A stretch of 64,000 nt of DNA from Botryllus schlosseri. Taxonomy: Eukaryota. Below are positions 17,501 to 54,239 of the stretch, piece after piece (the first letter of the stretch is position 1; each line of letters starts with the position of its first letter). The translations under genes and the position numbers were made by a program. The DNA lies in NCBI GenBank assembly GCA_051294905.1, contig CM119376.1, forward strand, positions 28,148,001-28,212,000. The letters are read 5' to 3'. Under the pieces are notes generated by a model. That model ran no database searches. It saw only the letters and a list, made by a program, of their open reading frames with translations, and was not told the DNA's origin.

Positions 17501-17579
17501 ATGCGGGGGAGTGACCTCATGAATTCCGTGACTGCCTTACTATTCCTATTGGAAATTCATTGTCACGTGCAAGGACAAA
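17501..17579 (+). CDS. aGPCR exon 1, signal peptide
   Basis: MRGSDLMNSVTALLFLLEIHCHVQGQ has a hydrophobic core and a VQG|Q cleavage-like site. The phase-1 donor gtaaga matches the phase of the next exon. Confidence 0.7.
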
Positions 17580-20500
17580 GTAAGAAAATTAGCAGTGAAC
17601 GAATTTTAATGATGCAGATGGTAAGGTAAGCCACCGTGTGTCAAACGTGGGTCGTATATAATAGTGGAATAAGGCCCACTATATGTCTATAATAATTGAA
17701 CTAGTACCAGTGATGAGAAAAATGATGAAATTCGATATCAGACTACACATGCTGATCGCGAAATGCTTTACGGGAGTCACATGAAGTGCAAAAAATATTC
17801 TTCCCATTGAATACCAGCTGTCAAATATTCATGGGCAAAATTAGCATATGTATACTTTTATTTTATTTTATTAGCCCACGTGAGCTTATAGGCACAATCG
17901 TACCAGACAAAGTTCAGCCACAAAATATTTCTTAGCCGGCCGCAGGTTGCAGACCCCTGCATTGAAGTATTAGGGAAAGGTTGGTCACAATGGATACAGG
18001 GGCACAATGGTATATCGTGACTATTTCCAAAACCCAACAGGAAGAATATACATCGCTGCGATGATTCAGTAGTGTCATATCGGCCGTAATCCTGATGTGG
18101 TTTGATTTCGCCAGCGTCGCTGTCTTTGTGAGAAAATGACGAGTTGCTTAATTTTGCTAACCTGCATAACTTTACGTCGCTTCCTTTCGATCGCGTTTTA
18201 GGTGGGTATGTCTCGTTTGTTGTGCTTAGTACACAGTTTAGTCAGACCAATTGTTTATCGCCCTATGATATATTAGGAGCAAGATTGCGATTTTTAAGTT
18301 TTTTGGTTTTTGCCCTGAAGAAGTGGGTGGGTCATATTGGGACAATTTGGTTGGGGCACAATGGTCCATTGATATCCAAATGCAGATTTTACAAAATTAA
18401 TAAAAATCAAGACAAGAGTGCGCAGAAACAAGATCGTCACCAACACTCCCTTAAACAACATATCTTGAAAGGTCACGCAATAAATGGAGGACAATCAATG
18501 TGGATCGACGAGCCGTCAGAGATATTCATGGCAGTTTCATTACGATTCAAAACTTTTTAATGTAAAGGGAAACTGGTCTTGGACATCTGCTGATCCATCA
18601 TTTTCTTCAACAGTTCTCCGTTTCTTGCTAACTGATGCGGAATTATTTTCTAATACTGTCCCATATGTTTTTCAAGTGGCAGTCAATTCGCTATTTCTAC
18701 GTATTGTCAGATCATTTTTCTTTGTAAATATGCGTTTTACGTTCATCTATCGTTTTGCAGAAGTTCGTTGGTATTTCAAAATATATTAATGACTAAAATT
18801 GTGTTTTTGGCCCATTGTGCCCAACCTTCCCCTACTATATTTTCGACTGCAGCTGATCATGAATTTCTGATCATCAACTTGTTATTCTCACCCAACTTGA
18901 GAAATCTCTAGCGAGCCAGCAGGCATATACGGCGTCGACAAAGTTTGGAGTGTAAAGCTGAGCCCGACCAACATCTGTCTCTTCAGAAATATATCGGTCT
19001 CGGCCAACTCCAGTAACGGCACCACTACTAAATCTGCGTTTAATGTAAAAAAGTCTTCAGTACTTTGGAATTAATTAGTGAGAACTATTATAGGACATTA
19101 CCAATGCTGAAAACCTGTGTCCTCGTGTACTACAACGCCCGTTAGACCGGGACCAGTATATAACTACATATACTATGTTTGATTTTAAATAAAGAGAGTT
19201 TATATGGAATATATTTGTTAAATTACTGTCACTATAGTTTACGAACCTGCTCGCCAAAACGCTATGGTTGATGACCCCGGTGGTCCCTAAATCTGGACCG
19301 TTTTGCTTTATTGTTTTTGGCTAATTCAATTGTATACATTTCAGGGATTATTCAGAAAATTTCGAGATATAAAATTGAAAATCTGAAATATAACAAATAT
19401 ATGTAGGCTATAAGGCAATTTACTATAGAAGTCGCTTCGAAGTTAAAACTAAATGTTTTTGATGCCTCTAATATCAAACACAGCCGTATTGAGACTCGAA
19501 TACGTCGGTGAGCATTGGAATAGTCACGATGTCTGTAATTTATTTCATGTCCTGTGTATATATTTCGCTGTTTTCTCGATACACAGCATGCACTTGGGAT
19601 CCACCCCAACCAAACGTATACACGAGAGCTAATGGGGCGCCTGCTACGTTGAATCTTTCGGTGTCCGATGAGCTACTTACTAATGCCGACCGGGTCACGT
19701 GGACACTGGGATCGGTAAGTTATATGTAGGCAATTATGCATACATTGAATAATCTAGAAAAAATGAACTCCCTTCTTACTATTTCATAGCAAATTTTCCT
19801 GTTTCGATCATTCCCGAACATATACCTGCACGAAGCCGTGAGAATTCGTCACAGAAGCGCGCTCCTTTCAATGATTAGTATTTGTCGCCTTCTCAAAAGT
19901 TAGGAAGCGAAGTTGCTTGAGGTATCCATCAAATACACCAGCCAGATGTTAACGTCCACCGCGGAAATGTTGGTTAAGGCTGATTCAAGCATATCCGGTT
20001 CCGTATGACATGTCCGGTTTCCGGCACACAAGGTATACAGGAACAAGGTAATGCCGGACGCACGCGCTAACACTGACTGCCAAGTATGCTGTGATCGTAA
20101 CATATCAATAGCACCAACGACGTTGTTGTACCCTTTGACAGAGCTCAATACGATCGGTTTCCAGGCTTTTATTAATATAAGAGTAAGCTAGTGTATCTGA
20201 AAACAAACCACACGACAATAAAACATAGTTAACACAGGTACAACGAACTGAAGCGATGTCACACCCAACTAGTACAGCATGAAATTAATAGTCACGATGT
20301 AAAGGTATAATGAGAAAGCAATCAGCACAAACATCCTCTAGTAGTCAAACGTAACGTAATCACCACAACCTCAACGTTAACAAAATATGAGTCATTATTT
20401 AGAGGTTTGTCCATATCGTTCAGGCGCGTTTGATTCTACTAGCTAGACCTGCTCAAAGGTGGAGGATCAGTGTCACCCTCTTCGAATATTTCCTAGGAAT

Positions 20501-23500: not shown

Positions 23501-26500
23501 GGATTAGTATCGCATTTTCATATCAATAATTCAATAATATCATTTACATCCCATGATGTGGACGACTGCTTATTCTGTCAAAAATTGACACTTCCTGGGA
23601 TGCATGAAATTGAATCAAGCTCTCTACACCTTCCGTATATAGCTCCATTTGCAGCTTTTGACATTTCATGCAAACGAATTACGGTCGTTTTCACAACTAC
23701 TTACTTACATGAGTAGATTTTAAGTCAGTCAATTCTACTTCTACTTCAAGTAGTTTTAGGTTGCTTATGTAATAAGTACTTCTACTCGTACTTGAGTAGA
23801 TTTTTGTCGCTACTTCTACTTCTACTTGAGTAGCTTTCTTGACTACTTTGACCACCTCTGGGTATTGGTGAATTCCACAGCTTTAAATCAGATATTTATT
23901 TCAGATTGTGATTTCCGCACGTCGATTTTCAAGCGTGGATGGAGGGTTCACCGACCTATTTGACAATCTGCGTGGAATCATGAGGTTTAATATCCGATAA
24001 TATTACTCTCATTATGACAGTATCACATATTCCCTCTGTTTATTTACAGCTATTCAACAGGTCTCCACAGTATTACGATTCCTGCAGTCTATAGAAACGA
24101 CAGCGGTCTCCAGATTACGGTGACCAGTGGAGGCTGTTATTTGAATGATGTTTCACACCCCATTACGCTTCAGGTCGAATGTGAGTTTGCACGTAATTCA
24201 GTATGAGTATTAGTATTTAGCGCTTGGCAATTTGTAGCTTGGTAGTGTGTAGTCTGAACTTCTACGTTGTCACGAAATTGTGCGTCCAGCCAAGGTTAGT
24301 CACATGCCAGAGGTGGTCAGTAACGAAGTATTTCTACTTTTTGGAAGTACTCAAGTAGTTTTCCTCTACTTCTGCTACTTACTCAAACAGATCTGATTTT
24401 CTCTACTTCTACTTCTACTTCGCAATATTTTGCGATCTACTTACTTACTTTTCACTATTTTCAGTTTGTGAAGTAGAGGTAGTTTAATCCGCCAATACGA
24501 AAGATAGCCTGAGGAATTTCGGGGCTGTTTTCACGGAGTACCGACATTTAATATTCATAAAAGTCAAGTAGGGCCCAGAAATTTTGTTGCGCTTCGCGCA
24601 CACTAGTTGGAGTGTCAAATATGTTTTCACGAAAGTATCAGTGAATATAATTTAGGTACCGGATCCTTGGTTCCGCTCACACCGCATTGTCTCCCATATC
24701 AAATATTTCATCACAGTACCTATGGCTCACCATACCGTTTGAAACTACCGTTTCGCAATCTAGCAATTACCATTCATTTCGTTATCTAGAAACCCATGAC
24801 TTGTCCTGCCAATCTGAAAAATCCGGCTTTTTCTTTAACGTTACACCTGTTTTAGCAGATCACCTTTGAAGCTTTATGGACAAAAGACATGAAATATATT
24901 TTCCGCTTTTTAGAAGTGGTATTTGCATTTCACTTTCACTTCCGAGTATCATACTTTGAGTTCTATAATTACTTTCAGTTCTTTTGTCAGCATAACATAC
25001 ACGCTGAAGCATAAAAACAAGCGTAGTAATTCCTCTATTTTCCGAAAATAAAGCTACACTAAATATAACTTTTACGATCCACAATATTTGTTAGTATACC
25101 GTATGCTAATCGCGCAAAGTGTTGAAACCGTGTCCAACTTCTCCGTATTGCTCTTCGCCTAAACATGAGGCCTTATAATATGGGGTAGGGCGCCATGTAA
25201 TGATATTCTCTAAAACGGGGTCTTCTAGTCACATGATGCGAAATAATGCTTATTCTGTCGAAAATCCATACCCCCTTGGATGCATCAATTCGAATAAAGC
25301 TTTCTGCACCTTCCGCATAGGTCATTTTGCAGCTTTCGACAGTCCATGCGAACGAATTAAGACTGTTTTCAAAACTACTTACTTACTTGAGTAGATCTAA
25401 AGTCAGTCAATTCTACTTCTACTTCAAGTAGTTTTAGATGGCTTATGGAAGAAGTACTTTTACTCGTAGTTGAGTAGATTTTTTCGTCGCTACTTCTACT
25501 TCTACTTGAGTAGCTTTCTTGACAACTTCGACCACCTTTGGTCACATCACATGTGTAAACCGCTAAAAGTTTCGTGTTCGTATTAACACGACCTTTATAA
25601 AAGGTTCATCTTGTGCACAATCGTGAACACTAACTTATGTTAATTAAAACACAAATTCCCTTCCTCTCTGCGCCCATGTCCGTAAAATATATTGCCGGAC
25701 TAGTAGTTGTTAATCAAGCTTGGCGATATTGAACAATGTCACTCACGTGAGTGACATTTCCCGTCATTGTCTTCTAGATCTTGCTGATTAATTATATTAA
25801 GATAGAGGGTTAGTTTTCGGTACAGTTAGACCCCCTATTCGCACCAAGTAGCTGGGTGCCGCACCCAATCCCCACTTTCCTCTTTGGATAATCTCATCAC
25901 TGTCTCTAATACAATTACAAACACACGCATAGTTTCCGTAGCGAACCAAGTATATGGGCATTACTCGATTCACGAAGGAGCCGGAATATATTTAAAGGCG
26001 GAATCGGGACTTATCTATCTATTTATATCTACCATTCAATTGTGTTCTAGTCTCACAACCTGCGATATTTTTCAAGATTCTCGAATGAATTTTATCAATA
26101 ATATTGGAACTTGCATATATTACTATTAATATTTCATCCTCTATCAGTCCATGTGATCAGGTTAATCATTAGAACTGGGATTATAGGCACTATGATTCGA
26201 GTAATAATTCTATTGATTCGTGACGAGTATAGGGAGGTATATATTTGCGGTACTATTTTCCACCGTGGAAGGATGGAAGCCTAGATTGTTGTATTACAGC
26301 ATACGAAAAGTTTAATACAAAGCTACACAACACGCGTTTGTGGAAATGACATTTATATGAAGTCGTAATCAATCCACAGCTTTTTCACAGAGAACTATGA
26401 AATAGATTGGCGATAACATACCAAATCATCTTTAATGAGATGTTGAACTGACATTATTTGCAGTGTAGTCACTTAAAAAGCACCTATCTGAACGTCTCAC

Positions 26501-39788: not shown

Positions 39789-39841
<53 letters not shown>

Positions 39842-42800: not shown

Positions 42801-45800
42801 TACAAGGTTCATAAACTCAGTAGACTTATATAGGATACTATATTGCAAATGCTCTCTATGACAGTCCCAGTCCCATATTTCAGTGCTTTTATCAATACAG
42901 ATCGTTGCAGCAAACGTCGGCAGTGATGACGTGCCTATCAGAAACTTGAAAGATCCGATTGAGATGAATTTCTCCGGGGAGAAGAAGAAGCCCGGGCAGA
43001 AATCCGGAGCGAGCTTTAACGTAAGTATGCCTTTGTCCATACCCCATGCCGCTTCAACTGAATAGTGATAGCTCAAGTGTGATCCAATATCTCGTAATTA
43101 TCTAATACGACGAAAATGCTGCAAGTCTGCATACTGAAGGGCATCGGCGATAGTACTGTGTGGGCATATGTTGTGTTGAGATCATTGGTCACTGGTCACT
43201 GTGGTCAGTAGGCTATATTTGAAACCTCACAAATATCAGCAAACATCAGAAATAGAGTCTGTGGGTGGGTAAACTCACGGCTATGAAAATCGTACGACTC
43301 CCCCGCCCAAATTCGCGGGTCGGTAGCAAAGTTTTCACGAGTCTTCGCGCACTCACCAACTCACTGTGCGGTTCCTTGGACAACAGTTCGTAACGACAAA
43401 AAAGGTCATCACTTCGTTTTTCTTGTGCGTGGCGCAGATTTTTCTGTGCGCAGCGACAGCTTAGAGGGAACATTGGTCGGTAAAGTGTTAGCCTATAGCA
43501 AGGGTTTATGTCATTTACATCTGATACAATTTCACCTCGACTGTGCGGAGAGACTACCGTAAAATTGCATGAATAACATCATCTACATATTTAATTGCCT
43601 GCAAAACGTCATTCCCTAATTCCATACCTGCAGAAAACGGTTACACACTTTACATTCTGTGTTGATTTCAATTTTTGGATATCCACCAGTCCGCCGAATA
43701 TTTTTTGAATTTCTACCCACTCGGGAGCTAAAATTGCTTGGGAGCCACTGTACTAGTTGAAATAAATGAGCCTCATACACCCGTCGTCCTATGCATATGA
43801 ATGCGGTGAGACGGCAGTAGGCACATCACCTTTTGTCAATAATGTACCTGTAAATCATATCTCGGACATAGTCTATTCTCAGGCTGCTGTGAATCCCCAT
43901 TATAGTTTGTCTCGAGTGTCTCTCAAACATTTTTGAGTTAGCGCCCCCCGCTCCCTGGACCCCAACCCCTAACCACGCCTAAATTAACAAATAATAAATA
44001 ATAAATAATAAACAAAAGTTTTTCTGCATTTATCACAACTACCAATGACACACATGAAGCTGTGCATCATCATTGTTATATGGGGTTTGGGCGTTGATAA
44101 GAACAATCTAAAATTTCGACGTTCCGATGCGTCAAGTTGGTGCCTGCTGCGTCAAAAGCTTCGTCACGGCATTGAAAGCAGTGTCCCATACCGTCCAATT
44201 TATATCCGGTGCCCCCAATCGCCCATTGCCGGAGTCCCCATGAATGACGCTCGAGGGTGCTTGCGCCTATGTTGGGGATCACTGGTTTACATTGTAACAT
44301 GATCTGAACGGAGGTGATCAAACTGATTATGTAGGCTACATGATCGAGATAACCAACTATACGTTGGTGTAGATTGGGAACATTGAAATAGCAAAGCCAC
44401 AAACTCCATTAGGATTGAATGTTGATGGACACCAAAACGGAGTAAAACTGCTCGGTCCGTACTCACGTCCGCCTTCCTGATTGCGTACAGCTCTACCCAC
44501 GTTCATAAACCATAAAATGCTATAATATACTGTGCTATGTCGCGATGCAATAATTACGTTGAATCAAGCACTGCATGCTTGGCCGGAAGTACAATGGAAT
44601 TGGACGTTAGACGTTAGAATGACACGAAACCAGGAAGACTCCGTGTCATTGTAATCCACTACAGAGGCATGAACACAGGCAGAATCGCTGAAATAAGTAT
44701 GGTATCTCCCAATTGCTAGCAATTGCTAGTGTCACGTTCACAACCAATCCAATATCACGTGTATTTATCTAGAAATTTCCAATCAGCTGGAAACACCACC
44801 CTGTGTAACGTTTAGTTTCGGATCAGTATTGAACAGTGATCGTTTTCCAGAGAACGATGGATTTCTTCAAATGTGGGTATTGGAATGTTGGTAAAAGCGA
44901 GTGGCGCTACGACGGGTGTGTATGGGTCGTGGACAGCGACGATAAGTTGACCAGATGCCAGTGTAATCACTTAACCAACTTCGCTTTACTTGTGGTAAGT
45001 AAACTCCCACTTCCATCGTTATCGCCTACAGCGTGACTTAATTTATACCATGTTTGCTGAGGCTTTAATCGAATGCATATTCGACATCCCACCCCAAACG
45101 AATGATGATTGTGAATATACTTTGATTTTGAATCAATATTGCAGCGTACATCCACGATAAATCATCCAACATAAATATCGCGTTATACAGACAACTCCGC
45201 TTAATGCGGACGATTCGTGTGGTTTAAAGCATGTTGTTATCGTTGATTTTTGATTTTAATTTTACCATACTGATTTTATTGGTTATTTTGGTTTTTCAAA
45301 TTTTCGGCCGAGATGCGTGAATTTGGTTTATTATCGGACAATTATCTGCATTTTATATAAACCTGAGATAGCATCTCGTCACCGGCACCGGTATAGTTCA
45401 GCTATTTGACAGACAGACGGGAAAAGAGCAAAGAGCGATAGTCAATCAATATGTTAGCGTTTTGCTGTGGATACTAGTTAATTGCATGCGACATGCTGCT
45501 GCTATTTCCGAGGCAGTGGCGGGATGCCGCAAACGAAGCGCAATCCGGAGTCTCTATCGAATTCGAAAAATTCCCTCATCTCTGATCCAGTTTGCGGGCA
45601 GAAACCACTCCATCGATCAAGATAAAGATGCAACTACTATTGAAACATCCCGATTTGACTCAACATGTTTCATTGCTACTAGAGCAGATCAGTATAATGA
45701 TTCGGGCGACCCATCATTATAATATAAGTTAAAAGTTTTCAGCTATCATTACCACATAGGTTGAACGTTTTCAGCTATCTGGATGATGATTCACAGCCCC

Positions 45801-48800
45801 ACATTATTAAAGCTAATCGTTATCCTTCGTCACCTTGATTGACATGGTCGTCATTCATCCCATTTTCTTTTGTTCGTGTTGTTGTTATTATGAGTAAAAA
45901 AACACAAAAAACTAAAAAAATCATTATTTGAATTATTTAATTGATTGAAATCGATTTTAATCAAGGGCAAAATGATTTTACCCAGAACCCTGCGGTCATC
46001 CAAGCAGTGTTGTTGAATGATTTGTCGTACTACGTGCTCTGATAGCCTCGGCAAATCCTGCGCAACAATGATGTGATATATACGTTGACTATAAAAGCGT
46101 AAATGATAGGGACGTGCAAAAGTAATCTTTTTGATCTCTGAATTTGTTACAGGCAACGAACGCCCTGGAACCCAATGTGCCCCTGGAAACGGTCAGCATA
46201 ATCGGAATGTCGCTTTCCATGCTGGGTCTCCTGCTTACCATTATCATCCATGCAATCAAAGAGTAGGTTACTATTTCGGAAGATATTTTTGAAGTAAATG
46301 TTACGCAGCTATACGACCACAAGTTTTAACCTCATAAATGCATTTTTTATTGTGTTTTGGTACTTTATGATTTTAACTACAAACCATCGTGGTAATTAAA
46401 TCAATAACTAAGTGTATTTTAGTTCACTTCGACGCGTACAGCTTGAGGCGACACTATGTACCAAGCCCAACTAACGCCTTATGACCCGTACAAAGTTCAA
46501 AGTCCTGCTCCGAAATATGTTCTGACCTGACAGTATTTTTGTTACTTCGATTCAGAGACATCAGAAAAAGACGGCCCACGCAGATATTATTCCACATATG
46601 CGTTAACTTACTGATATCCAGCATAATATTTATTGTTGGGATCGACAGAAATGAGAACAGAAGCACGTGTACTCTGATCGCAAGTTTTATGCATTACTTC
46701 TACCTGACTACCTGGTGTTGGATGGCCGTCTATTCGTACGATATGTACAGGTCGCTGGTTATGGTAAGCCGTTTTCTATGTGAAGCTGGTACAGTACATG
46801 TACAACGTTTACACTATGCTGCACTCATTCAATAGGTATTCGGAGCGAGCAAGTCGCGTTATATGACGAAGTGTACCTTAGTAGGGTACGGGGTGCCGTT
46901 ACTGGTAATGACACTGGACGTTGGAATAACGGTGGGATATGTGGACAAGATCATTCCACCGAACATTTATGTTCAAGGTATAAGCTTGGGATGTCGCTGT
47001 CCCAAGTTCTTTGACGGCCAATTGTTTTCTGAAACTTCTTTTTTGTTCGTGCGTTCATACAAGGCGCACTCCATTACGGGAGTTAAGATTATAAAATTAA
47101 ATCTTATGGTCGTGTCGGTGTTTTCTGTATCGAAACATGACTTGTACCAGGTTTTACTAATTGCACTATGCTTACACAAGTGTTAGGATTTTAGACTTTT
47201 AGACTTCCACCTAAAGCGGTGGTTCCCAACCGGTGGGGAGTTCCCCCCTTGTGGGGAATCAAGAGGTTTCTGGTGGCGAACAGACGCACTAGTCCAGTGG
47301 TTCCCAACCTTTTTCATCTCGTGCCTCCCTTGGCCGAAATTTAAGCCAAAATTCCCCCCTTGGGATAAATCTGCCCGACGATTAAAAAAGGTCATTTTTA
47401 CCGCGTAAACACCTGTTGACTGAGTGAATAAGACGGGCGGTACCGAGTGTTTGTTTCTAGCAGTGTTGTAATAACACTTTGTAGACCTCCAACAACAATG
47501 GTCTTGCTCGCAATCAAACAAATTGTGGAACGCTTGACTGAACAGTTCAAGTTTGCGTATGCATTTGACCAATAATATTGGTACTTTTGTATATAGGAGG
47601 GTTGACCAGACTCGAGTCTGACTCGACTCTCCATTTTCTGACGACTCGACTTGACTCGAGTCATTTTCTCAAAATACGGAAACGACTCGACTTGACTGGG
47701 GTATTGAGTCGACTTGGACTTGAGTCATTGAGCATTCGTCGAACCAAGCCATATGACTCGAGGCTATAAGACGGCAAAGACCGACATTTCATTGTAATTT
47801 AGAAGAACAGTACAGCGACCACCCTATTAGAATTTCGTCTATTGATCCTGGTACTTGACAATGCGACAAGAAACTGCTCAAAGTGAGGAAAATTAGTATA
47901 TCATAAATCCAAATCATTCAATATCACCAAACAGGGGTGTGACTTGGACTCGGACTCGAGTCATAATACCATTACTCGGACTCGACCCTCTGCTCTGTGA
48001 CTTGGACTCGAACTTGACTCAATGATGAATTAAAAATGACACGACTTGACTCGAGTCAAAACTATGAAAGTGAGATTGACTTGTGACTCGGAGCCTCGTG
48101 ATTTAGTTACAGCCCTGATATATAACATACACGTGATCAGATTCCCTGCTGGAGCTCCTTGAAATTTAGGACACCCATTACGTTTCGGCAACATTGCACC
48201 AAGTTTAATATGTCTTTTTTTGATCGGGTAGCTGTTCTTTGACTTGAATCGATGACGTTGGAATATTTTGTCACTGTCTGAAAATGTTGACTTGAAAATA
48301 TAAGGTAAATAATTTCACTAGAGGCCTCGTTATGACAGATTCGGCTCAACATTTGCTCGCTTAGGATATAGTTGATTGAGAGGCCGTCGCTTGCCTACAA
48401 AATTGTCTTGCGAGCTGCAGCACATCTGAACTAGTTTGAAAAAAGGGGGGAATTTGTATATGAAAAAGAGATTTCAAATAGCATTTAAACATACTTTCAG
48501 CAAGCGAAAAACAGCCATGAGGAGCATACGTTCGGATTTAACTGGTTGACTAAATGACAGTTCGGACATGAACAATTTGGAAAATCCGTTACAATTTCAA
48601 AGTGGAATTCCTCCCTAAAAATTGCAAAATTCCCCCCAGGGGGGGAATTCCTCCCCGGTTGGGAACCACTGCACTAGTCAAATAAATACATACAGTACGG
48701 AGGCATAACACCACAATAACGATCACAGCTCACTGCTGCTCTGGACTGTATGCGTTGTTAATGTTATGGCGTGTTGTTGACAAAAACTTATTCTGGAGTC

Positions 48801-51800
48801 CGGATCACAAACATTGAGGTCCTAAACACGTTTAGTCCGAGTAGCATGGTGTGCAATGAAGCTTTCGCAGACTTTTGTGAGTTACCGGTATGCACAAGAT
48901 GTTGTATGTTGCAGTTAAAGGCGATGTCTCAGGGATATTGGATGCACTAAAATTAGCAAATAGCTTGTCCGTGACATCCCACATGCCCCGCTGGTGAACT
49001 TGAAGCTTGATAACATGTAATGACTAAAGTTGAAAGAAAATCGGACCATAGTTAACTCGACCTGGGATTCACGTTTATTCAGGCAAATTATCAGCAACTG
49101 CAACCGTCAATGGTTTTATTTACACGGGTCGTTATTATCAATCCTGGGGCGTCTTAACCTGCACCAATAGAAAGTCGTCACTGAATAAATTCTTGCCAAA
49201 TTTTATTGGAAGGGACAGGTACAGGGATTTTAGGTTGTGGGGAGTGATGACTCGGGAATGAAAAAAAGGTTGGGAACCACTGATCTTATATGCAAAAATA
49301 TGGCACTATGGAATACATATTTTTCATTCACTTGAAAATTGTTACTTCTACTTCTACGACATTTCGGGTCGTCAGAGGTGGGTCGTACAGAAGTTCTTAT
49401 ACCCTTACGGAACAATCGAGTAACCTTTGCTTATCACGGTAACTCGCTTTATATATTCGGAAATACGCCTATAGTGTCACTTGTCATTATGCATTGGTCG
49501 CAACGATACGTCGTCCAACTTAGAAAGTAGCTACCTTCCGTTAACTGCTAAACATATGTCCCTCCTCGAACTAAGCTACTTTTGAAACTATACACCTATA
49601 AGTTAAACGTATAAGTGATAAGTTTCAGACCCTCAATAATCCACCTGAAATTGTTATAAAAATCTTGGAAATCCCTACTTTCAACTTGTAGTTAGTAGAA
49701 ATATCAGTGGTGGTCAAAATAGTCACCAAAGCTACTCAAGTAGGAGTAGAAGAATCGACGCAAAAATAAAGGGGAGATGTGGTACCGATGGATCACTGGG
49801 ACCGAAAATACTTGAAAAATTCTCCATGATAATTCCATGATTACACTCCGTGAATCTGTCTACAATTACATGCTGACAGAATCTTTCCTCGCATGCAAAA
49901 AATTCGACCTGCGTGAGTTATGGGGTCTGTGACGACTGATTTACGTTTTAGGGGGTGTAAAGTAAATTTTGATCGACATTTGCATTTTTCTATATCCTCT
50001 TGCAGACTAACAAACCCGCCATAATTTTAGATGTGAAGTATAGGGCTTGTATCAGCGTATATAATGGCACATATTTTTTGAATCAATGCTATCCTTAAGT
50101 GGACTATTTTCAAGTCAATTGCAATATTTATGGGGTGGGGGGGACCTACGGTACCATAGTCGAATCAAGCAAAATGGATGGACCAACTAATCACTTAGCA
50201 ACAGAAACTCGCCTACCTATATATAGGCTGTAAATCATAGTTACCTGTGGTGTTTTATCGCTATTACGAGGTATTTGAAAGTCAAAATGTCGATTGGCGG
50301 GTAATATGTATGTGACAATAATTTTGTAAGTTTAGGCGTAAATCAAAACATGATTTTATGCCAACATTTGTGTTGATATGATCTATTTTATTCTTGAAGG
50401 TCGCGACGAAACAGTTTTCATTGGCTTCCTGTAGCTTAGCTTATAGTACACAACAATACAAGTTAACAAATTAGAGTTTTTGAACGTATGTCTCATAGGT
50501 CCCATGGTCGTGTGCCTTTGGACCCACCGGGTGGGGACCGATGACACGTTCGAGCAACAAATTTTAAACGTTTATAAATATTTTTTGAAAAGGCGGATAT
50601 TCATGTAAATGTCCGCGATAGGTAGAGCTTGTATCGAAGTGTTGAGATAGCAAAAGATCTGCTATTCTCGGCTGAAGATTTGAGGGCCAGAGATCATTTT
50701 GCAATTTTTGATCCATCGGTAGCACATCTCCCCTACTCAGCATGATTTGAAAGAGTACTTTTAAAAGCAACCTTAAGCTACTTCAAGTATAATTTACTGG
50801 CTTTAAATCTACTCAAGTCAAGTAAGCGGATGCTAGAACTGTCATGATACGATCGCATGGACTGTCAACAGCAGCAAATTGAGCTGTGCGGAGGTGCAGC
50901 GAGCTTGATTCACATTGATGCAACCCCGGAGGTATCAGATTTCGACAGCATAAGCAGTCGACCACATCATGAGATGCAAATGACAGTTTTTCTATGCTGG
51001 AATAGTGATTCTTAACTCCACCTCATTATGAGATCCGCAGTTGGAAGAGGAGCAATGTGGTATGTGGAGAAGTTGTATCGGATACGGTGTTAACACTTTA
51101 CGCGATTAGTATATACGTGAATAAAAAATACGTCGGCTCGTAAAATGCCATATATTGTCATTTTATTTCCGGAAAAGAGAGACATTACTAAACTTGGTCT
51201 TGAACTTCAGCATGTATGTTCCCCGGAAAAAATGAATTGGAATTAATCGGAACTCGAAGTAATGATATCGCGAATGAAAAGAGAAATGCAAATGCAATTT
51301 CTAAAAATGGAAAATATATTTCATGTCTTTCGTCCAGAAAGTTCAGCGGCGGTCTGCTAAAACAGGCCTAACGATAAAAAATATCCAGATACCACTATTC
51401 CAGATTGAGACACGCCATGTGCTGCTAGATTACGATACGATAGGCAGCTATATTTACTGTGTTGAAACATGTCGTATGGGCGACGGTGGGGTGTGAACGG
51501 AACCAGCACGTAACCCGCTACCTTAATTATATTCACCAGTAATTTCTTGAGAACATATTTGTCACTCCATATCTTCTTTGTAAGAAGCGCGGCGAAAATG
51601 CTGGGCTTTACTTTACTTTTGGGAATATTAATATATTGTTAGTAGTCCTACTCCGTGAAAACAGCCTTGAAATTCGTCAGGATCTCTTTAATTGGAGGAA
51701 TATATTATTTCTACTAGACAAACTGAAAATAGCGAAAAGCATATAAGTAAGTCACACAATATTACAATGTAGAAGTAGGGGGGAAATTTTATTTACTTTA

Positions 51801-54239
51801 GTAAATACTGTAAGTAGTGGAAAACTACTTGAGTACTTAGAAAAAGCAGAAGTACCACGTGACTGACCACCACTGAGAAATATACGGTGTTACTTCTATA
51901 GCTATACTTGAGTATACTTGGCATAACAACTCTTACTATAGTCAAAGGTATGCTTCGATCCCCTCTGCTCGTACCAATGATTCGTGCAAATACATATATG
52001 CCTACTTTCTAGCGCTAAGTAGCGATGCGGGGTTTTAATGATGGTATGAATTGCAGGCGATAACTATCACAGACTGAACAACGTCACAGGCCGTCAATCA
52101 GCCTACGTCGCAGAGAACATATGCTGGATACACCAATACTCTCTTTCCATGGGCTTCCTCGTTCCCGTCGCTATTATGCTGGCGTTCAATATATTTGTAT
52201 ACAGCATGGTGTTAAGAACACTTTACCGGAGAGGAAAATCGGTAAATACAAATGCGTGCACAACTGCGCAATGTTCACTCGTGACGTTGAAGGAGTATTT
52301 CCATCAGCAATCTTGCTATTTGAATCCATAAATTCCCTAGTTTAGTTTACCCGTTACAAAAATGATAACAGTCATATTCCGTAATGTGGTATGTGTTTCA
52401 TGATTTGCTAATAATTTACTGTCTCAGCAGTAATCAGATAAAGAGTGATAAAGTTCACGTTACAATCGTGCCTTTGGATTACAAGCATTATTGTCAATCA
52501 GTTAAGAAATCATGCGCCCAATATGCACACATCAGATTTGGACAACCTGCTAATTCTAGTCGTGTAATTAGATCGAAACGTCGGTAATCTAACGCTAAGG
52601 TAATAGGTAAAATGCGTCCATGCTCTGATTTTAATTCCAACTTTATTTTTGGTATTCCTGAAAATGCTATAGGAGTAAAGGAGTAAAGCTTTGCGTACAG
52701 AAATCTGCCATTTTCATGCGTATGAGAACGGGCTCCGATTTGTCATGAATTGCTGAGCTTGAATTTTTTGTATGTCTTTCTATTTCGGAATGTATTTTCA
52801 TTTCCCAGTTTTTGCGAATTCAGTAAATCTAATTGTAATCCAACCTGTTAATCAAAACGTTGGATGTAGCCTACTATTCTAATTCTAATCTGATTTGGAA
52901 AATCTAAAAATTTTCCAGACCAACTGTGCCTCATATTAATATGTCTAGGTAACTTCTCATTGCGCAATTTATGTAATCAAAATTATTGCTCACCCATTGT
53001 AGAGACTTGGTTACCGGAATCCGAATTATGACACGTTAACTAGCGCGATAATGTGGGCCGCGGGTCTACATACATTTGCGAGCAAACATTTTCGAGCACG
53101 AACATTACCAAAACAAAGGTGCGTTGCAATCTAACTGATGTTAACGTTCATTCACAGTTCAAAGAACTTGTTGGAAACTTTGATCGACCACAGATGTCTA
53201 ATTGACTTCAACAGCGAGTAATGTACATTACGTTAATAAATTCATGGAAAACTGTTTTGGTCTCTATGCTTCAAACTTCAAGTTTACGTTAAATACGATC
53301 TTTTCCTTGTATAGATGGGTAAGTCCGCGATTAATGCATCGATTCAGGAATCCGACCCGCCAAGTACTTCATTTTCCCATATCCGGCCCGCCGACTGGGA
53401 AAATTGTCCGTCCCTGATATATGCGGACTTGGGGTTATTTATCGTGAATACCTCTACCCACAACACCGATCTGTCTCGTTTCAGGTGCAATCCTCGGCAA
53501 AGAAGACAAGTATGAAAGACAAAATTTTCATAAGTGTAACACTGATTGCAAGTACCGGTATTGCCTGGGTGTTCGGATATTTAATGCTTCTATCAAAAGA
53601 TGCAACCTATCTCACAGTCATGAGCTGGGTTTTTGCCATTTTGAACACTATTCAGGTTAGCCAACGGTGTTTTTTGTTTCACCGACGCCGCAAAAAGCTG
53701 AACGTGAATCGTACAAACCTTGAAAATATCTTTCGAAGAACAATTCCGAATGTACACCAGGTTCATAACCACGGCATCCCAAACAATTAATTTCCGAGGC
53801 TTATGTTCGAGGCAGTCCCTAAAGTGTTGTGCCGTTCGATCATGATATCATCATTGCGGTGGAAGTCGACACGGGAACTGAAACGCAGTATTCGTTACGG
53901 GCCACGGTCCTCAATTTCTGATTTCTGATACTCCATTTACGTGGTTACGCATAGAGAAGTATGCAGCTAATCGATGGCCCCTCCTTGCTGTCAAAGATAC
54001 AGGCCTTTGAATTTTCCATCGTTTTACAGGGCTTGGTGATATTCCTGAGTACTTGCGTTCGTAATGAGACGATGCGCAACATCTGGCTACAGCCTCTGTT
54101 GAGGTGCTGCGGAGGAGAGAGCAACTATAAGCTGGAGTCCACTTCCAAGTCTTCTTCGGAAAATACATATTCGACGGCCACTAGGGGAACATCGGCGCAG
54201 TCGACTACCAAGCCTCTGGCTTCAGAAAGCAACATGTAA
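17501..54239 (+). CDS. Adhesion GPCR (class B2), complete 20-exon model, ~1000 aa: SP-Ig-like-CCP-like-EGF-EGF-HRM-like-GAIN/GPS-7TM
   Basis: Exons 17501-17579, 19587-19714, 23905-23984, 24050-24180, 31342-31515, 32944-33057, 33110-33247, 33314-33400, 34046-34161, 34220-34381, 38072-38356, 39251-39469, 42901-43020, 44851-44994, 46153-46262, 46556-46763, 46836-46977, 52057-52241, 53485-53655, 54030-54239. All junctions are GT..AG and phase-consistent, giving 3003 nt without an internal stop. GPS and 7TM motifs are diagnostic. The N-terminal exon linkage is less certain, and extra phase 1-1 exons could have been missed. Confidence 0.88.
17973..18832. mobile_element. pogo/Tc1-like non-autonomous element
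   Basis: TIR ggg(a/g)aaggttgg(t/g)cacaatgg flanked by TA on both sides. Confidence 0.75.
19587..19714 (+). CDS. aGPCR exon 2, Ig-like domain N-half
   Basis: tacacag|..|gtaagt; TCTWDPPQPNVYTRANGAPATLNLSVSDELLTNADRVTWTLGS. Confidence 0.72.
19900..20800 (-). mobile_element. Degenerate BEL/Pao LTR-retrotransposon pol remnant (RT then integrase)
   Basis: With frameshifts it reads RNTYV-DD..FGG and LG.LW.PTAD (RT region, 20500-20800), then LRSQ.TW, VRHYL....CRK and TN.SAVD (integrase Zn-finger/core, 19900-20150). Motif order matches BEL pol. Confidence 0.5.
22586..23860 (+). mobile_element. CAGAGGTGGTC-family MITE with (GTAGAA)n subterminal repeats
   Basis: 11-bp TIR; ggtattg duplicated on both sides. 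Confidence 0.88.
23905..24180 (+). CDS. aGPCR exons 3-4 (23905-23984, 24050-24180), Ig-like domain C-half
   Basis: IVISARRFSSVDGGFTDLFDNLRGIMS|YSTGLHSITIPAVYRNDSGLQITVTSGGCYLNDVSHPITLQVE, with a 65-nt intron. Phases 0-2-1 link exon 2 to exon 5. Confidence 0.72.
24308..25540 (+). mobile_element. CAGAGGTGGTC-family MITE
   Basis: Colinear with 22586-23860; imperfect TSD gtcacat. Confidence 0.88.
26720..26975 (-). mobile_element. Decayed LINE APE endonuclease N-terminal fragment
   Basis: LLVGTENV*G and NID..GIQETK (frameshifted) resemble the GTWNVRG and DI.GIQETK motifs. Confidence 0.38.
27078..29278 (-). mobile_element. hAT MITE (CAGTGGTCGGGAACC TIR) hosting nested 28041-29077
   Basis: TSD gtccatac/gtctatac; reverse homologue of 39854-41060. 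Confidence 0.85.
28041..29077 (-). mobile_element. CAGAGGTGGTC-family MITE (nested)
   Basis: TSD tggatact/tggatacc. Confidence 0.86.
30790..30871 (-). mobile_element. tRNA-derived (Lys-like) SINE head or tRNA pseudogene
   Basis: Minus strand has A box TGGCATAATGG, loop ATCTTGA, AGGTCGTGGGTTCAATC (B box) and then a T-run. The acceptor and T stems do not pair. Confidence 0.6.
30916..31254 (+). mobile_element. TAGGGTTACCAT-family hAT MITE
   Basis: Perfect TSD ttatagct. Confidence 0.86.
31342..31515 (+). CDS. aGPCR exon 5, sushi/CCP-like Cys-rich module
   Basis: Phase 1-1 exon: CNLTYFEEADAADQSDCGYMCSRIFQCHNLNISTFQATCQEDATWGAISQPDEKRCK. The TC..D.TW motif is CCP-like. Confidence 0.78.
32165..32755 (+). 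mobile_element. Composite of TAGGGTTACCAT-family MITE pieces
   Basis: Left TIR at 32165, a right TIR ending at 32477, then a second right-half fragment; no TSD found. Confidence 0.65.
32944..33057 (+). CDS. aGPCR exon 6, EGF domain 1
   Basis: CENQVCFNGGTCQERGESYDCLCTPAYDQPDC has canonical 6-Cys EGF spacing; phase 1-1. Confidence 0.9.
33110..33247 (+). CDS. aGPCR exon 7, EGF domain 2
   Basis: CTMDGTKDTCKENSKCRNDPTLLRGVCDCDIGFRGDGTIGC carries the CxC..GF.GDG..C motif; phase 1-1. Confidence 0.9.
33314..34161 (+). CDS. aGPCR exons 8-9 (33314-33400, 34046-34161), HRM-like domain
   Basis: YCNANNVSAFHFELSDVGTTAYSLQKKCP|DGHYVAFALCKVNDAGEANFVDFTFILCNATINSVIPT is a 4-Cys module directly before GAIN. 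Confidence 0.78.
34220..34381 (+). CDS. aGPCR exon 10, GAIN subdomain A start
   Basis: EQVPNNASSEQLKTDTAKIQLLTSNSETKLVKEDVEKISDFVEGVSEAAAAQKT; phase 0-0. Confidence 0.85.
35000..35985 (+). mobile_element. Scrambled BEL/Pao pol remnants
   Basis: IGRL.LES..IY.....ILLDRRSHL (~35050-35140), RKDNPAD (~35265-35285) and WHHVTRKD (~35958-35983) resemble the BEL WxHVxxKDNPAD and GRL..PIIL motifs. Confidence 0.45.
35996..36094 (+). pseudogene. Decayed 28S rRNA fragment (~99 bp)
   Basis: ttggtggtagtagcaaatatt...gaagtggagaa...catgtgaacagcagttga matches the conserved eukaryotic LSU core. About 16 of 99 positions differ from the vertebrate sequence as recalled from memory. Confidence 0.85.
36118..37820 (-). 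mobile_element. CAGAGGTGGTC-family MITE with ~410-bp cargo
   Basis: Perfect TSD gttttcaa; extra sequence at ~36808-37220. Confidence 0.88.
38072..38356 (+). CDS. aGPCR exon 11, GAIN with T/P/S-rich insert
   Basis: VSADVLGNVVNIVDNLV...ILQSINKLANSVEIPENETSVNFTTASMLVT; gtgcag|..|gtaagt. Confidence 0.88.
39251..39469 (+). CDS. aGPCR exon 12, GAIN
   Basis: VTKTPVNQPVWF...SISIPTAALKKAKDKNGLAKLSFFLYFDSTLFPSDSYSPGL; ctcag|..|gtgagt. Confidence 0.88.
39793..39837. repeat. (CT)n microsatellite preceded by AATAAA
   Basis: Directly visible. Confidence 0.9.
39854..41060 (+). mobile_element. hAT MITE (CAGCGGTCGGGAACC TIR)
   Basis: Perfect TSD atctatac. Confidence 0.88.
41201..41397 (+). mobile_element. 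197-bp hAT MITE (CAATGTTCCCTCTAA TIR)
   Basis: Perfect TSD ggcatgtc. Confidence 0.88.
42320..42790 (+). mobile_element. GACTCGAG-repeat MITE (left end degraded)
   Basis: Reverse homologue of 47597-48117; ends acaaccctg. Confidence 0.8.
42901..43020 (+). CDS. aGPCR exon 13, GAIN
   Basis: IVAANVGSDDVPIRNLKDPIEMNFSGEKKKPGQKSGASFN carries the I.NL..PI...F motif. Confidence 0.9.
43327..43475 (-). mobile_element. CAATGTTCCCTCTAA-family MITE
   Basis: TSD gtcggtag/gtcggtaa; homologous to 41201-41397. Confidence 0.75.
44060..44400 (-). mobile_element. Decayed CR1/L2-type APE endonuclease fragment
   Basis: VIHGD..., PDINW and LLTQQAPT*RIG...IVLIN resemble GDFN.PDI.W and L.Q.V..PTR..LDLV. Confidence 0.45.
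44851..44994 (+). CDS. aGPCR exon 14, GPS autoproteolysis motif
   Basis: CGYWNVGKSEWRYDGCVWVVDSDDKLTRCQCNHLTNFALLV matches the C..W..W...GC...CxCxHLT.F consensus. Confidence 0.96.
46153..46977 (+). CDS. aGPCR exons 15-17 (46153-46262, 46556-46763, 46836-46977), TM1-TM4
   Basis: LETVSIIGMSLSMLGLLLTII; ILFHICVNLLISSIIFIVGI; CTLIASFMHYFYLTTWCWMAVYSYDMYRSLVM; LVGYGVPLLVMTL. Confidence 0.94.
47295..48671. mobile_element. Charlie-like hAT element (CAGTGGTTCCCAACC TIR) hosting 47597-48117
   Basis: Perfect 15-bp TIR and perfect TSD cactagtc. Confidence 0.85.
47597..48117 (-). mobile_element. GACTCGAG-repeat MITE (nested)
   Basis: Ends gagggttg / cagccctg; TSD 6/8 (gtatatag/atatataa). Confidence 0.8.
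49705..51875 (-). mobile_element. CAGAGGTGGTC-family MITE hosting 49771-50733
   Basis: TIR cagtggtggtc; perfect TSD agaaatat. Confidence 0.86.
49771..50733. mobile_element. pogo/Tc1-like element (nested)
   Basis: 25-bp TIR ggggagatgtg(g/c)taccgatggatca; TA follows the right end. Confidence 0.8.
52057..52241 (+). CDS. aGPCR exon 18, ECL2-TM5
   Basis: GDNYHRLNNVTGRQSAYVAENICWIHQYSLSMGFLVPVAIMLAFNIFVYSMVLRTL includes the ECL2 CW and the F..P..I....N TM5 motif. Confidence 0.92.
53485..53655 (+). CDS. aGPCR exon 19, TM6-TM7
   Basis: KIFISVTLIASTGIAWVFGYLMLLSKDATYLTVMSWVFAILNTIQ. Confidence 0.93.
54030..54239 (+). CDS. aGPCR exon 20, TM7 end, helix 8 and C-tail
   Basis: Q|GLVIFLSTCVRNETMRNIW...KPLASESNM* completes the N..QG..IF TM7 motif. 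Confidence 0.93.
   Translation, partial: GLVIFLSTCVRNETMRNIWLQPLLRCCGGESNYKLESTSKSSSENTYSTATRGTSAQSTTKPLASESNM

What the first reader, a model, noticed from the sequence alone, without database searches (positions are those of the whole stretch)
17501..54239. Adhesion GPCR with an unusual Ig-like/CCP-like/2xEGF/HRM/GAIN ectodomain, in a tandem cluster
The spliced ORF is intact and has a cleavage-competent GPS (HL|T) followed by a Stachel-like TNFALLV. To my knowledge this ectodomain combination matches none of the vertebrate aGPCR subfamilies: ADGRE have EGFs without Ig or HRM, and ADGRF/ADGRA have Ig without this EGF pair. A near-identical paralogue ends at 2056, so this looks like a lineage-specific expanding receptor array. 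An immune or environmental-sensing role is inference.
Basis: partly seen in the sequence, partly recalled or inferred. Interest (0 to 1): 0.78.

Follow-up and report, generated by a model that had tools for sequence, protein, structure and literature searches.

The report
Sea-squirt adhesion GPCR, ADGRG7-like core
This is a real, intact adhesion-type G-protein-coupled receptor gene of a sea squirt, one more member of a tunicate-only radiation of such receptors already described in the literature; its outermost "Ig-like" and "CCP-like" parts could not be verified, so it is ordinary rather than a new kind of receptor.

Summary
The gene is real. I built a 19-exon GT-AG model (17501-54239, + strand) with an intact 958-aa ORF. 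Pfam confirms GPS (E 8.7e-13), 7tm_2 (5.8e-14) and two EGF exons. Profile scans with relatives recover every exon from 33110 to the stop in collinear order; EGF1 rests on Pfam, homology and RNA. The GPS reads H-L|T, followed by T-N-F-A-L-L-V.

The "HRM" is a 4-Cys domain on two exons, one found only by an unbiased scan. It matches the N-terminal domain of vertebrate ADGRG7/GPR128 (E 2.6e-10). In a relative it folds like HormR, though weakly. The core EGF / HormR-like / GAIN / 7TM therefore does have a vertebrate counterpart.

The 7TM lies in a tunicate-only clade. Nearest are a Styela protein (CUB, many FN3, 2 EGF; 37% identity over about 800 residues) and a transcript-derived protein with CUB. 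Lineage-specific aGPCR radiations in Ciona are published.

The four N-terminal exons (signal peptide, "Ig-like", "CCP-like") have no Pfam hit, no homologue and no RNA support.

One RNA-derived contig joins the two EGF exons. Only the last two exons of one upstream paralogue are in the window (88-89% nucleotide identity, dN/dS 0.16).

Verdict: new member of a known kind.

The parts
17501..17579 (+). Putative exon 1: ATG, hydrophobic signal-peptide-like stretch, phase-1 donor AAA|GTAAGA
   Evidence: ORF and splice logic only. No homology, no RNA evidence. Codon-usage score is not above the intronic null. Unverified.
19587..19725 (+). The alternative donor at 19714 is stronger but in another phase.
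   Evidence: Acceptor and donor scan. Codon-usage score in the top 1.2% of intronic ORFs. No Pfam hit. The only PDB hit is an unrelated GH16 protein, E 0.06. It is not a phase 1-1 exon. Unverified.
24050..24180 (+). Alternative starts are 24061 (making a phase 1-1 exon of 120 nt) and 24021.
   Evidence: 24061-24180 is the best-scoring phase 1-1 exon candidate between 17.6 and 32.9 kb. No Pfam hit. The only PDB sequence hit is titin Ig, E 0.12. Unverified.
31342..31515 (+).
   Evidence: Among the top phase 1-1 candidates. No Pfam Sushi hit at E<=1. The only PDB hits are MASP-1 and MASP-2 CCP modules at E 0.45 and 0.6. No similarity to relatives. No word-search hit. No coverage in run X1. Unverified.
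32944..33057 (+). EGF1 exon (phase 1-1)
   Evidence: Pfam EGF 22.2 bits (cut-off 21.5) and hEGF E 5e-5. z=14 against the Styela homologue. An X1 contig starts aligning at 32946 with 5 unaligned letters before it, and runs across the next junction.
33110..33247 (+). EGF2 exon (phase 1-1). Its C-terminal half corresponds to the start of Pfam GPR128_N.
   Evidence: Pfam EGF_3 E 1.6e-4, below its cut-off. Profile of relatives E 1.5e-6. The junction 33057 to 33110 (52-nt intron) is present in an X1 contig.
33314..33400 (+). Exon for the N-terminal half of the 4-Cys HormR-like (GPR128_N-type) domain; 87 nt, phase 1-1; 66-nt GT-AG intron upstream, donor GCC|GTTAGT
   Evidence: Found by an unbiased scan of all 2215 ORF pieces with a profile of relatives (E 0.0022, collinear). 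Adding it raises the ADGRG7-profile domain score from 4.1 to 27.2 bits. The X1 contig ends at 33248, one base past the donor; that base G is also the first base of this exon.
34046..34161 (+). Exon for the C-terminal half of the HormR-like domain
   Evidence: Profile of relatives E 6.5e-5, collinear. Alignment to ADGRG7 and tunicate relatives with conserved Cys.
34220..38356 (+). GAIN subdomain A, two exons: 34220-34381 and 38072-38356
   Evidence: Profile hits E 4e-9 / 1.2e-5 and 1.8e-9. tblastn to P0002 and P0015. An X1 contig ends at 34383, two bases (GT) past the donor; GT also starts exon 38072.
39251..43020 (+). GAIN subdomain B, two exons: 39251-39469 and 42901-43020
   Evidence: Collinear profile hits E 4e-6 and 0.08. 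Continuous alignment to the Styela homologue.
44851..44994 (+). GPS exon with the H-L|T site and the start of the tethered-agonist (Stachel) segment T-N-F-A-L-L-V
   Evidence: Pfam GPS E 8.7e-13, 49 bits. Profile E 1.3e-15.
46153..54239 (+). Seven-helix domain and C-terminal tail, six exons: 46153-46262, 46556-46763, 46836-46977, 52114-52241, 53485-53655, 54030-54239 (stop at 54237-54239)
   Evidence: Pfam 7tm_2 E 5.8e-14 and 1.1e-4 on single exons. Collinear profile hits down to E 2.5e-38. 55% identity to P0002 and 50% to Styela P0015 over GPS plus 7TM. Hydropathy shows six strong segments plus a moderate TM3.
1..3204 (+). 3' end of an upstream paralogue: part of the TM6 exon (2-103), the last exon 1847-2056, and a duplicated 3' flank to 3204
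   Evidence: blastn 88-89% to 53553-55391. Protein 34/34 and 64/69 identical; dS 0.10, dN 0.017, dN/dS 0.16 over 104 codons; splice sites conserved.

Best explanation
This is a functional member of a tunicate-specific radiation of adhesion GPCRs. Its conserved core is the one seen in vertebrate ADGRG7/GPR128: EGF-like, then a 4-Cys HormR-like domain, then GAIN with GPS, then a class-B 7TM. Here the core is extended by a second EGF and by a short, fast-evolving N-terminal region assembled from phase 1-1 exons.

Inferred mechanism, from established knowledge of the aGPCR family: the GAIN domain cleaves itself between Leu and Thr of H-L|T. The two fragments stay together. Ligand binding or mechanical pull on the N-terminal modules then exposes the T-N-F-A-L-L-V tethered agonist, which activates the 7TM and a G protein.

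The gene arose by local tandem duplication. Family members swap their N-terminal modules by exon shuffling.
For: Gene model:
- An intact 958-aa ORF from 19 GT-AG exons.
- Pfam GPS, 7tm_2 and EGF on single exons.
- Collinear profile hits with no gaps for every exon from 33110 to 54239.
- 37% identity over residues 120-927 to Styela clava XP_039260156 (E 7e-164), and 39% over 224-929 to P0002.

Core architecture:
- An ADGRG7 ectodomain profile matches residues 230-371 at E 2.6e-10 and the GPS region at 1e-12.
- AF2 model of the relative P0002:275-685, with this gene's exons in the alignment: pLDDT 80.8, GAIN Z about 21 to GPR110, BAI3, Gpr126 and latrophilin.
- Its 4-Cys domain alone (pLDDT 82): best match is the Gpr126 HormR domain (Z 5.3). 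Foldseek gives no match at E<=0.001; BAI2/3 HormR (prob 0.90-0.92) and class-B1 ectodomains fill the top of the list at E 0.3-1.4.

Phylogeny and selection:
- In the 7TM tree the gene groups with P0002 and Styela P0015 (100/99), inside a tunicate-only clade (96/94).
- Purifying selection between the two local copies, dN/dS 0.16.

Expression and context:
- A spliced EGF1-EGF2 contig in run X1.
- Neighbouring aGPCR genes in Clavelina.
- Published Ciona-specific aGPCR radiations (PMC2396169; PMC8584163).
Against: Expression is barely documented: two raw RNA-seq runs showed no exon coverage, and only one small run gave contigs, which could come from the close paralogue.

The first four exons rest on ORF, splice-site and phase logic alone.

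Cleavage, G-protein coupling and any ligand are inferred from family knowledge and were not tested.

The relation of the tunicate clade to ADGRG7 in the 7TM tree is unresolved (an open fork), and the tree lacks most vertebrate families.

The structural evidence for GAIN and HormR comes from a relative with 55% identity in the GPS-7TM region (39% over the full alignment), not from this protein.
Confidence: 0.85

Rival explanations
1. One reading: the receptor carries a genuine Ig-like domain and a CCP (sushi) domain ahead of the EGF pair. That would give an ectodomain combination not seen in any described aGPCR.
For: Exons 24061/24050-24180 and 31342-31515 are the best phase 1-1 exon candidates upstream of EGF1. 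EGF1 starts in phase 1 and its RNA contig carries unaligned letters upstream, so some upstream exon exists. The only PDB sequence hits of these exons are titin Ig (E 0.12) and MASP-1/2 CCP (E 0.45-0.6). The 58-codon exon has 6 Cys and a Trp spaced roughly as in the C-terminal part of a sushi module (direct reading).
Against: No Pfam Ig or Sushi hit at E<=1. No similarity to any N-terminal region of 5 relatives (z about 0). No word-search hit. No coverage of the CCP-like exon in run X1, where the EGF exons have depth 5.5. The two Ig half-exons cannot be joined with their best splice sites in one phase. Codon-usage scores are not distinctive for the 24.1 and 31.4 kb exons.
Confidence: 0.25
2. 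At least one of the four N-terminal exons is mis-assigned. The true 5' end uses other exons, fewer exons (for example signal peptide directly to 24061 or 31342), or a start outside what was modelled. The mature ectodomain would then be essentially EGF-EGF-HormR-like-GAIN plus a short unstructured or novel piece.
For: All upstream candidates are phase-compatible with each other, so several in-frame combinations exist. Exon 2 is not phase 1-1. Nothing but ORF and splice logic supports exons 1-4. My own first guess for an internal exon by eye was wrong and was corrected only by a profile scan. This shows how unreliable unsupported exon calls are in this sequence.
Against: EGF1 needs an upstream phase-1 donor and a signal peptide. 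17501-17579 supplies both, and no CUB or FN3 exons like those of the sister genes exist anywhere in the window.
Confidence: 0.4
3. The copy is a silent or decaying duplicate (an unexpressed or young pseudogene) in a tandem family.
For: No exon coverage in two bulk RNA-seq runs at the depth read. No indexed run is on record as RNA for 44.7-47 kb.
Against: No stop or frameshift in 19 exons, and all splice sites are canonical. dN/dS is 0.16 against the neighbouring copy while silent sites have diverged by about 10%. A spliced contig exists in X1.
Confidence: 0.1

Closest known systems
Vertebrate ADGRG7 / GPR128 (Pfam GPR128_N, GPR128_GAIN_subdomA/B, GPS, 7tm_2)
   Same: The same membrane-proximal cassette: an EGF-like piece, a 4-Cys domain, GAIN with a C-x-C-N-H-x-T-N-F-A motif, and 7tm_2. 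The ADGRG7 profile matches residues 230-371 with almost no gaps (E 2.6e-10). Relatives give weak GPR128_N and GPR128_GAIN Pfam hits. Automated names of tunicate relatives are 'ADGRG7-like' or 'GPR128'.
   Different: Only about 30% identity in the 7TM. The tree does not resolve orthology. This gene has an extra full EGF and an additional N-terminal region. It belongs to a multi-copy tunicate clade, whereas ADGRG7 is single-copy in vertebrates.
Tunicate-specific aGPCR radiations: 'Unclassified Adhesion' of Ciona (Kamesh et al. 2008, PMC2396169) and the non-vertebrate families ADGRN/ADGRX of Ciona and lancelet (Wittlake et al. 2021, PMC8584163)
   Same: The gene clusters with Ciona, Clavelina, Phallusia and Styela aGPCRs in a tunicate-only 7TM clade. 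It shows lineage-specific duplication. Some published Ciona members carry EGF repeats.
   Different: I could not map this gene to ADGRN or ADGRX by name, because their sequence lists were not examined. The N-terminal exons have no counterpart in the relatives fetched.
Styela clava XP_039260156 (named fibronectin-like / tenascin-like; P0015) and Logan transcript protein P0002
   Same: These are the closest relatives found. They share the order EGF(-EGF), HormR-like, GAIN, 7TM, with 37-39% identity over 700-800 residues and 50-55% in GPS plus 7TM.
   Different: Their N-termini are CUB plus about 13 FN3 (Styela), or CUB plus an unassigned 145 aa (P0002). This window has no CUB or FN3 exon.
HormR-GAIN aGPCRs (latrophilins, BAI1-3, ADGRG6/Gpr126)
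   Same: A small disulfide-rich domain sits directly before GAIN. In the relative's model it resembles HormR and class-B1 ectodomains. The GAIN fold matches at Z about 21.
   Different: Pfam HRM (PF02793) does not match this gene or its relatives. The conserved Trp residues of HormR are absent. Structural scores for the small domain are weak (Z 3-5).

Membership tests
Adhesion GPCR (class B2) | Secretin-type seven-helix domain (Pfam 7tm_2) | tested here: met
   7tm_2 E 5.8e-14 and 1.1e-4 on single exons. Collinear profile hits over six exons. Full-length alignment to the 7tm_2 regions of relatives.
Adhesion GPCR (class B2) | GPS motif with the H-L|T (or S) cleavage triad directly before TM1 | tested here: met
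   Pfam GPS 49 bits, E 8.7e-13. Four Cys, two Trp and H-L-T read directly. Cleavage itself is not testable in silico.
Adhesion GPCR (class B2) | GAIN domain fold (helical subdomain A plus beta subdomain B, about 320 aa) | tested here: met
   About 310 aa between the HormR-like domain and TM1, aligned collinearly to relatives. The AF2 model of relative P0002, with this gene's exons in the MSA, matches solved GAIN domains at Z about 21. The protein of this window itself was not folded, because a spliced sequence has no reference.
ADGRG7 / GPR128 family | GPR128_N-type N-terminal domain (EGF-like piece plus 4-Cys domain) before GAIN | tested here: met
   A profile of 15 mammalian ADGRG7 ectodomains hits model residues 230-371 at 27.2 bits, E 2.6e-10. 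Cys positions are conserved in the alignment. The Pfam model itself could not be run on the spliced sequence.
ADGRG7 / GPR128 family | 7TM groups with vertebrate ADGRG7 to the exclusion of other families (orthology) | tested here: inconclusive
   The tunicate clade, ADGRG7, and the amphioxus/echinoderm/mollusc clades meet at an unresolved fork. Most vertebrate families were not in the tree. In the PDB sequence search of the Styela homologue the best matches are ADGRG2 and ADGRG6 (no ADGRG7 entry among the matches).
Tunicate-specific aGPCR radiation (Kamesh 2008 'Unclassified Adhesion'; Wittlake 2021 ADGRN/ADGRX) | 7TM clusters with tunicate-only paralogues, apart from vertebrate families | tested here: met
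   The 22-row tunicate-only clade has support 96/94 and 100/98. This gene sits inside it with 100/99 support next to Styela P0015 and P0002.
Tunicate-specific aGPCR radiation (Kamesh 2008 'Unclassified Adhesion'; Wittlake 2021 ADGRN/ADGRX) | Identity with the named families ADGRN or ADGRX | not tested
   The papers' sequence lists were not examined; only the text was read.
HormR / HRM domain (Pfam PF02793) | Match to the HRM profile | tested here: not met
   No HRM hit on the exons at E<=1 or on full-length relatives at E<=0.01.
HormR / HRM domain (Pfam PF02793) | HormR / class-B ectodomain fold | tested here: inconclusive
   For the homologous domain of P0002 (pLDDT 82) the best match of 48,161 chains is the Gpr126 HormR domain (Z 5.3). 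BAI2/3 HormR (Foldseek prob 0.90-0.92) and more than ten class-B1 ectodomains (Z 3.2-4.2) follow. All scores are weak because the domain is small.
Immunoglobulin-like domain | Match to an Ig-superfamily profile or fold | tested here: not met
   No Pfam hit on either half-exon at E<=1. Only titin Ig at E 0.12 for the second half. No similarity to the Ig of relatives P0023 and P0087. The joined domain could not be scanned or folded, because a spliced sequence has no reference.
CCP / sushi domain | Match to the Sushi profile (four Cys, conserved Trp, about 60 aa) | tested here: not met
   No Pfam hit at E<=1. Only MASP-1/2 CCP at E 0.45-0.6 in the PDB sequence search. The exon has 6 Cys and 1 Trp in 58 codons, so it is a Cys-rich extracellular-type module of unassigned kind.
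EGF-like domain | Six-Cys EGF pattern and profile match | tested here: met
   EGF1: Pfam EGF 22.2 bits against cut-off 21.5. EGF2: EGF_3 22.2 bits, below its cut-off, with a six-Cys pattern. Both align to the EGF pair of Styela P0015 (z=14).

The most novel reading that the evidence does not exclude
The N-terminal exons (about 150 residues before EGF1) are real and encode recognition modules with no detectable relatives. They would be attached by exon shuffling to a conserved ADGRG7-like signalling core, in a tandem family whose members differ mainly in these tips (CUB, FN3, EGF and unknown modules in the nearest relatives). That would make the family a rapidly diversifying surface-receptor array of sea squirts, for example for self/non-self or environmental recognition.
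Probability: 0.12. Interest if true: 0.5.

Novelty: new member of a known kind. Interest (0 to 1): 0.25.

Why it matters
It adds one well-delimited gene model to the tunicate-specific aGPCR radiation. It also links that radiation to vertebrate ADGRG7/GPR128, an orphan receptor that the literature treats as standing apart, through a shared EGF-like, HormR-like, GAIN and 7TM cassette. The nearest relatives keep the cassette and swap everything in front of it, which is a clear example of exon shuffling on phase 1-1 exons. None of this is surprising to a specialist: lineage-specific aGPCR expansions with shuffled ectodomains are documented for Ciona, amphioxus and echinoderms.

Tried and rejected
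1. ORF 39946-40179 as an exon: rejected. It is an interspersed repeat, matching minus-strand copies at 27.9-29.2 kb, and no profile hit falls there.

2. My first version of the extra HormR exon (33276-33395, other frame, needing a 28-nt intron): rejected. An unbiased profile scan placed the exon at 33314-33400 in frame 0 with a normal 66-nt intron and a much better ADGRG7-profile score.

3. FN3 or CUB identity for the N-terminal exons (suggested by the sister genes): rejected. Local FN3 and CUB profiles find nothing in any ORF of the window. The apparent alignment of the CCP-like exon to an FN3 of P0015 is not significant.

4. Word searches with the CCP-like ORF and with the 33239-33511 ORF: blank. 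Given the length window, this says little.

5. Codon-usage test of exons 1-4: too weak to decide, because known exons overlap the null.

6. Raw RNA-seq runs X10 and X12: only repeats were covered.

7. Rfam on 29.8-32.4 kb, for the two very high-depth short stretches: no match.

9. Steps left out because a spliced protein has no reference and long sequences must not be typed: a Pfam scan, a structure prediction and database searches of the joined N-terminal region or of the full-length protein of this window.

Full report
**What the window is.** It is a 40% GC animal sequence without gaps. Earlier notes of this scan call the genome sea-squirt-type and mention a large tandem family of adhesion receptor genes on another piece. 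All close protein relatives found here are tunicate proteins from Ciona, Clavelina, Phallusia and Styela.

**Checking the observation.**
- Pfam on single ORF pieces gives GPS (49 bits, E 8.7e-13), 7tm_2 (E 5.8e-14 for the TM2-3 exon, 1.1e-4 for the TM5 exon), and EGF-type hits for two neighbouring exons. EGF1 passes Pfam's cut-off; EGF2 is below it.
- With a simple splice-site and phase search I assembled an 18-exon model with an intact ORF, all introns GT-AG.
- One ORF that looks like an exon (39946-40179) is a repeat.

**Relatives.**
- A full HMMER search with the TM2-3 exon found 1209 proteins at E<=0.001, the best only 60% identical. This species' own proteome is therefore apparently not in the library.
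- The spliced model aligns over residues 120-927 with Styela clava XP_039260156 (P0015; 37% identity, E 7e-164). It aligns over 224-929 with P0002, a protein from a 3.5-kb transcript contig of SRR32906214.
- P0015 is CUB, about 13 FN3, EGF, EGF, an unassigned stretch, GPS, 7tm_2. P0002 is CUB, an unassigned stretch, EGF, an unassigned stretch, GPS, 7tm_2.
- Other relatives carry EGF arrays, CUB, WAP or VWFD. A crinoid protein has HYR, EGF, Ig and SEA. An amphioxus protein has nine EGF, Ig and SEA.
- Several relatives give weak Pfam hits to GPR128_N just before GAIN. The amphioxus protein hits the GPR128 GAIN subdomains.

**The "HRM".**
- Aligning the stretch between EGF2 and GAIN in tunicate proteins and mammalian ADGRG7 showed a conserved 4-Cys domain. 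My first model had only its second half.
- My first attempt to find the missing half by eye chose the wrong frame and implied an impossible 28-nt intron.
- I then scanned all 2215 ORF pieces of both strands with a profile of the relatives. It returned four collinear hits: EGF2, a new piece at 33295-33402, 34048-34161 and 34220-34381.
- The new exon is 33314-33400. It is 87 nt, phase 1-1, with a 66-nt GT-AG intron upstream and donor GTTAGT. The model becomes 19 exons and 958 residues.
- A profile of 15 mammalian ADGRG7 ectodomains matches residues 230-371 at 27.2 bits (E 2.6e-10), almost without gaps. Without the exon the score is 4.1 bits.
- A second profile, covering the core of 14 tunicate relatives, hits every exon from 34046 to the stop in order, with contiguous profile coordinates. 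No exon is missing downstream.

**Fold evidence, from a relative.**
- A spliced protein has no reference, so I folded P0002:275-685 with an alignment that includes this gene's exons. The model has pLDDT 80.8 and pTM 0.82.
- Residues 103-409 match solved GAIN domains of GPR110, BAI3, Gpr126, latrophilin-1/3 and BAI2 at Z 20-22.
- The 4-Cys domain folded alone has pLDDT 82. Among 48,161 chains its best match is the HormR domain of zebrafish Gpr126 (residues 506-577, Z 5.3).
- BAI3 HormR and more than ten class-B1 receptor ectodomains follow at Z 3.2-4.2. Foldseek finds no match at E<=0.001, but ranks BAI2/3 HormR at probability 0.90-0.92 among GLP-1R, GIPR, CLR and CRFR ectodomains.
- The scores are weak, as expected for 75 residues, but the list is dominated by one fold.
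It is wrong as Pfam HRM membership: no HRM hit occurs in this gene or its relatives.

**Family placement.**
- GPS plus 7TM is 55% identical to P0002, 50% to Styela P0015, 40-43% to Ciona and Clavelina proteins, and about 30% to ADGRG7, Cirl and ADGRL2.
- In an IQ-TREE analysis of 40 seven-helix domains the gene groups with P0002 and P0015 (100/99), inside a tunicate-only clade (96/94, then 100/98).
- That clade meets ADGRG7 and the amphioxus/echinoderm/mollusc clades at an unresolved fork, away from ADGRL/ADGRE.
- For the Styela homologue the best solved relatives by sequence are ADGRG2 and ADGRG6.
- The literature already describes this. Ciona has 30 aGPCRs, of which 24 are unclassified and lineage-specific and two carry EGF repeats (PMC2396169). 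Two non-vertebrate families, ADGRN and ADGRX, radiate to up to 20 receptors in Ciona and lancelet, and ADGRG7 stands apart from the other G members (PMC8584163).

**The N-terminal exons.**
- EGF1 begins in phase 1, and the RNA contig that covers it carries five unaligned letters upstream of 32946. An upstream exon therefore exists.
- The candidates are 17501-17579 (ATG plus a hydrophobic stretch), 19587-19714/19725, 24021/24050/24061-24180 and 31342-31515.
- Among all phase 1-1 exon candidates between 17.6 and 32.9 kb, 24061-24180 and 31342-31515 rank at the top.
- The 19.6 kb exon is not phase 1-1. Its strong donor (19714) does not fit the strong acceptors of the next exon, so three in-frame solutions remain.
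- None of these exons has a Pfam hit or any similarity to the N-termini of five relatives (z about 0). The window holds no CUB or FN3 exon. There is no word-search hit and no convincing codon-usage signal.
- The only leads are non-significant PDB sequence hits: titin Ig (E 0.12) for the 24.1 kb exon and MASP-1/2 CCP modules (E 0.45-0.6) for the 31.4 kb exon.
- The Ig-like and CCP-like calls are therefore possible but untested.

**RNA evidence.**
- No indexed run is on record as RNA for the gene. Five small runs hold 5-14% of the words of 44.7-47 kb.
- Laying four runs on 29500-35499 gave three results for run X1:
  - A 256-nt contig covers 32946-33055 and 33109-33248 with the 52-nt intron removed. 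The single letter between the two sides is explained by a C>T difference at 33056.
  - That contig ends one base past the donor 33247. The extra base G is also the first base of exon 33314.
  - A second contig covers 34185-34383. It includes 35 nt of intron and ends two bases (GT) past donor 34381; exon 38072 starts with GT.
- These contigs differ from the window by 2-3%, so they may come from another allele or from the paralogue.
- The CCP-like exon and the two HormR exons had no X1 coverage. The tool's own notes say such a hole proves nothing.
- Two raw bulk RNA-seq runs covered only repeats.

**The tandem copy.**
- Positions 1-381 and 1741-3204 match 53553-55391 at 88-89%, across exon, intron and 3' flank. 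The upstream copy has an extra 1.36 kb in its last intron.
- The visible coding parts (104 codons) give dS 0.10, dN 0.017 and dN/dS 0.16, with conserved splice sites. Both copies are therefore under constraint.
- Downstream of 54.3 kb no aGPCR exon was found. The window thus shows a tandem pair, not a larger cluster.
- In Clavelina, two related genes lie side by side.

**Mechanism.**
- Shown: the sequence features of a cleavable GAIN/GPS, a Stachel-like segment and an intact class-B 7TM with the ECL2 Cys-Trp motif.
- Inferred from established aGPCR biology: autoproteolysis, non-covalent association of the two fragments, and activation by exposure of the tethered agonist on ligand binding or force.
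- Ligand, G protein and tissue are unknown. The immune or environmental-sensing idea has no evidence.

**Verdict.** This is a real and probably functional gene, an ordinary new member of a described tunicate aGPCR radiation with an ADGRG7-like core. The features that made it look exceptional are unverified.

Noticed in passing
window 11293-15605, minus strand: A run of long minus-strand ORFs. One matches endonuclease-reverse transcriptase / Exo_endo_phos (E 4e-11) and one matches zf-RVT weakly. This is a LINE-type non-LTR retrotransposon in the 15-kb spacer between the two receptor genes.
   Followed up: partly
window 22586-25541, 28036-29077, 36118-37821: Copies of an interspersed repeat (78-89% identity, both orientations) fill several introns of the gene. 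The putative exon at 24.05-24.18 kb sits between two of them.
   Followed up: no
window 29973-30021 and 32163-32210: Two unrelated stretches of about 48 nt have enormous depth in all four runs laid (thousands), with variable loose ends on both sides. They are pieces of very high-copy, transcribed elements. There is no Rfam match.
   Followed up: partly
window 63249-63479, minus strand: A weak tblastn match (E 0.002, 28% identity) to the C-type-lectin region of a mollusc aGPCR (P0162). Pfam finds nothing in the ORF 63243-63557. This may be an exon of a downstream gene on the other strand.
   Followed up: partly
L002 (Clavelina lepadiformis OX392440.1, 18.46 Mb): Two related aGPCR genes (805 aa and 904 aa) lie tail to tail within 7 kb. 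Clustering of this family is therefore not peculiar to the genome under study.
   Followed up: no
window 381-1741 against 53929: The upstream paralogue carries about 1.36 kb in its last intron that this gene lacks. It is an insertion or a deletion since the duplication.
   Followed up: no
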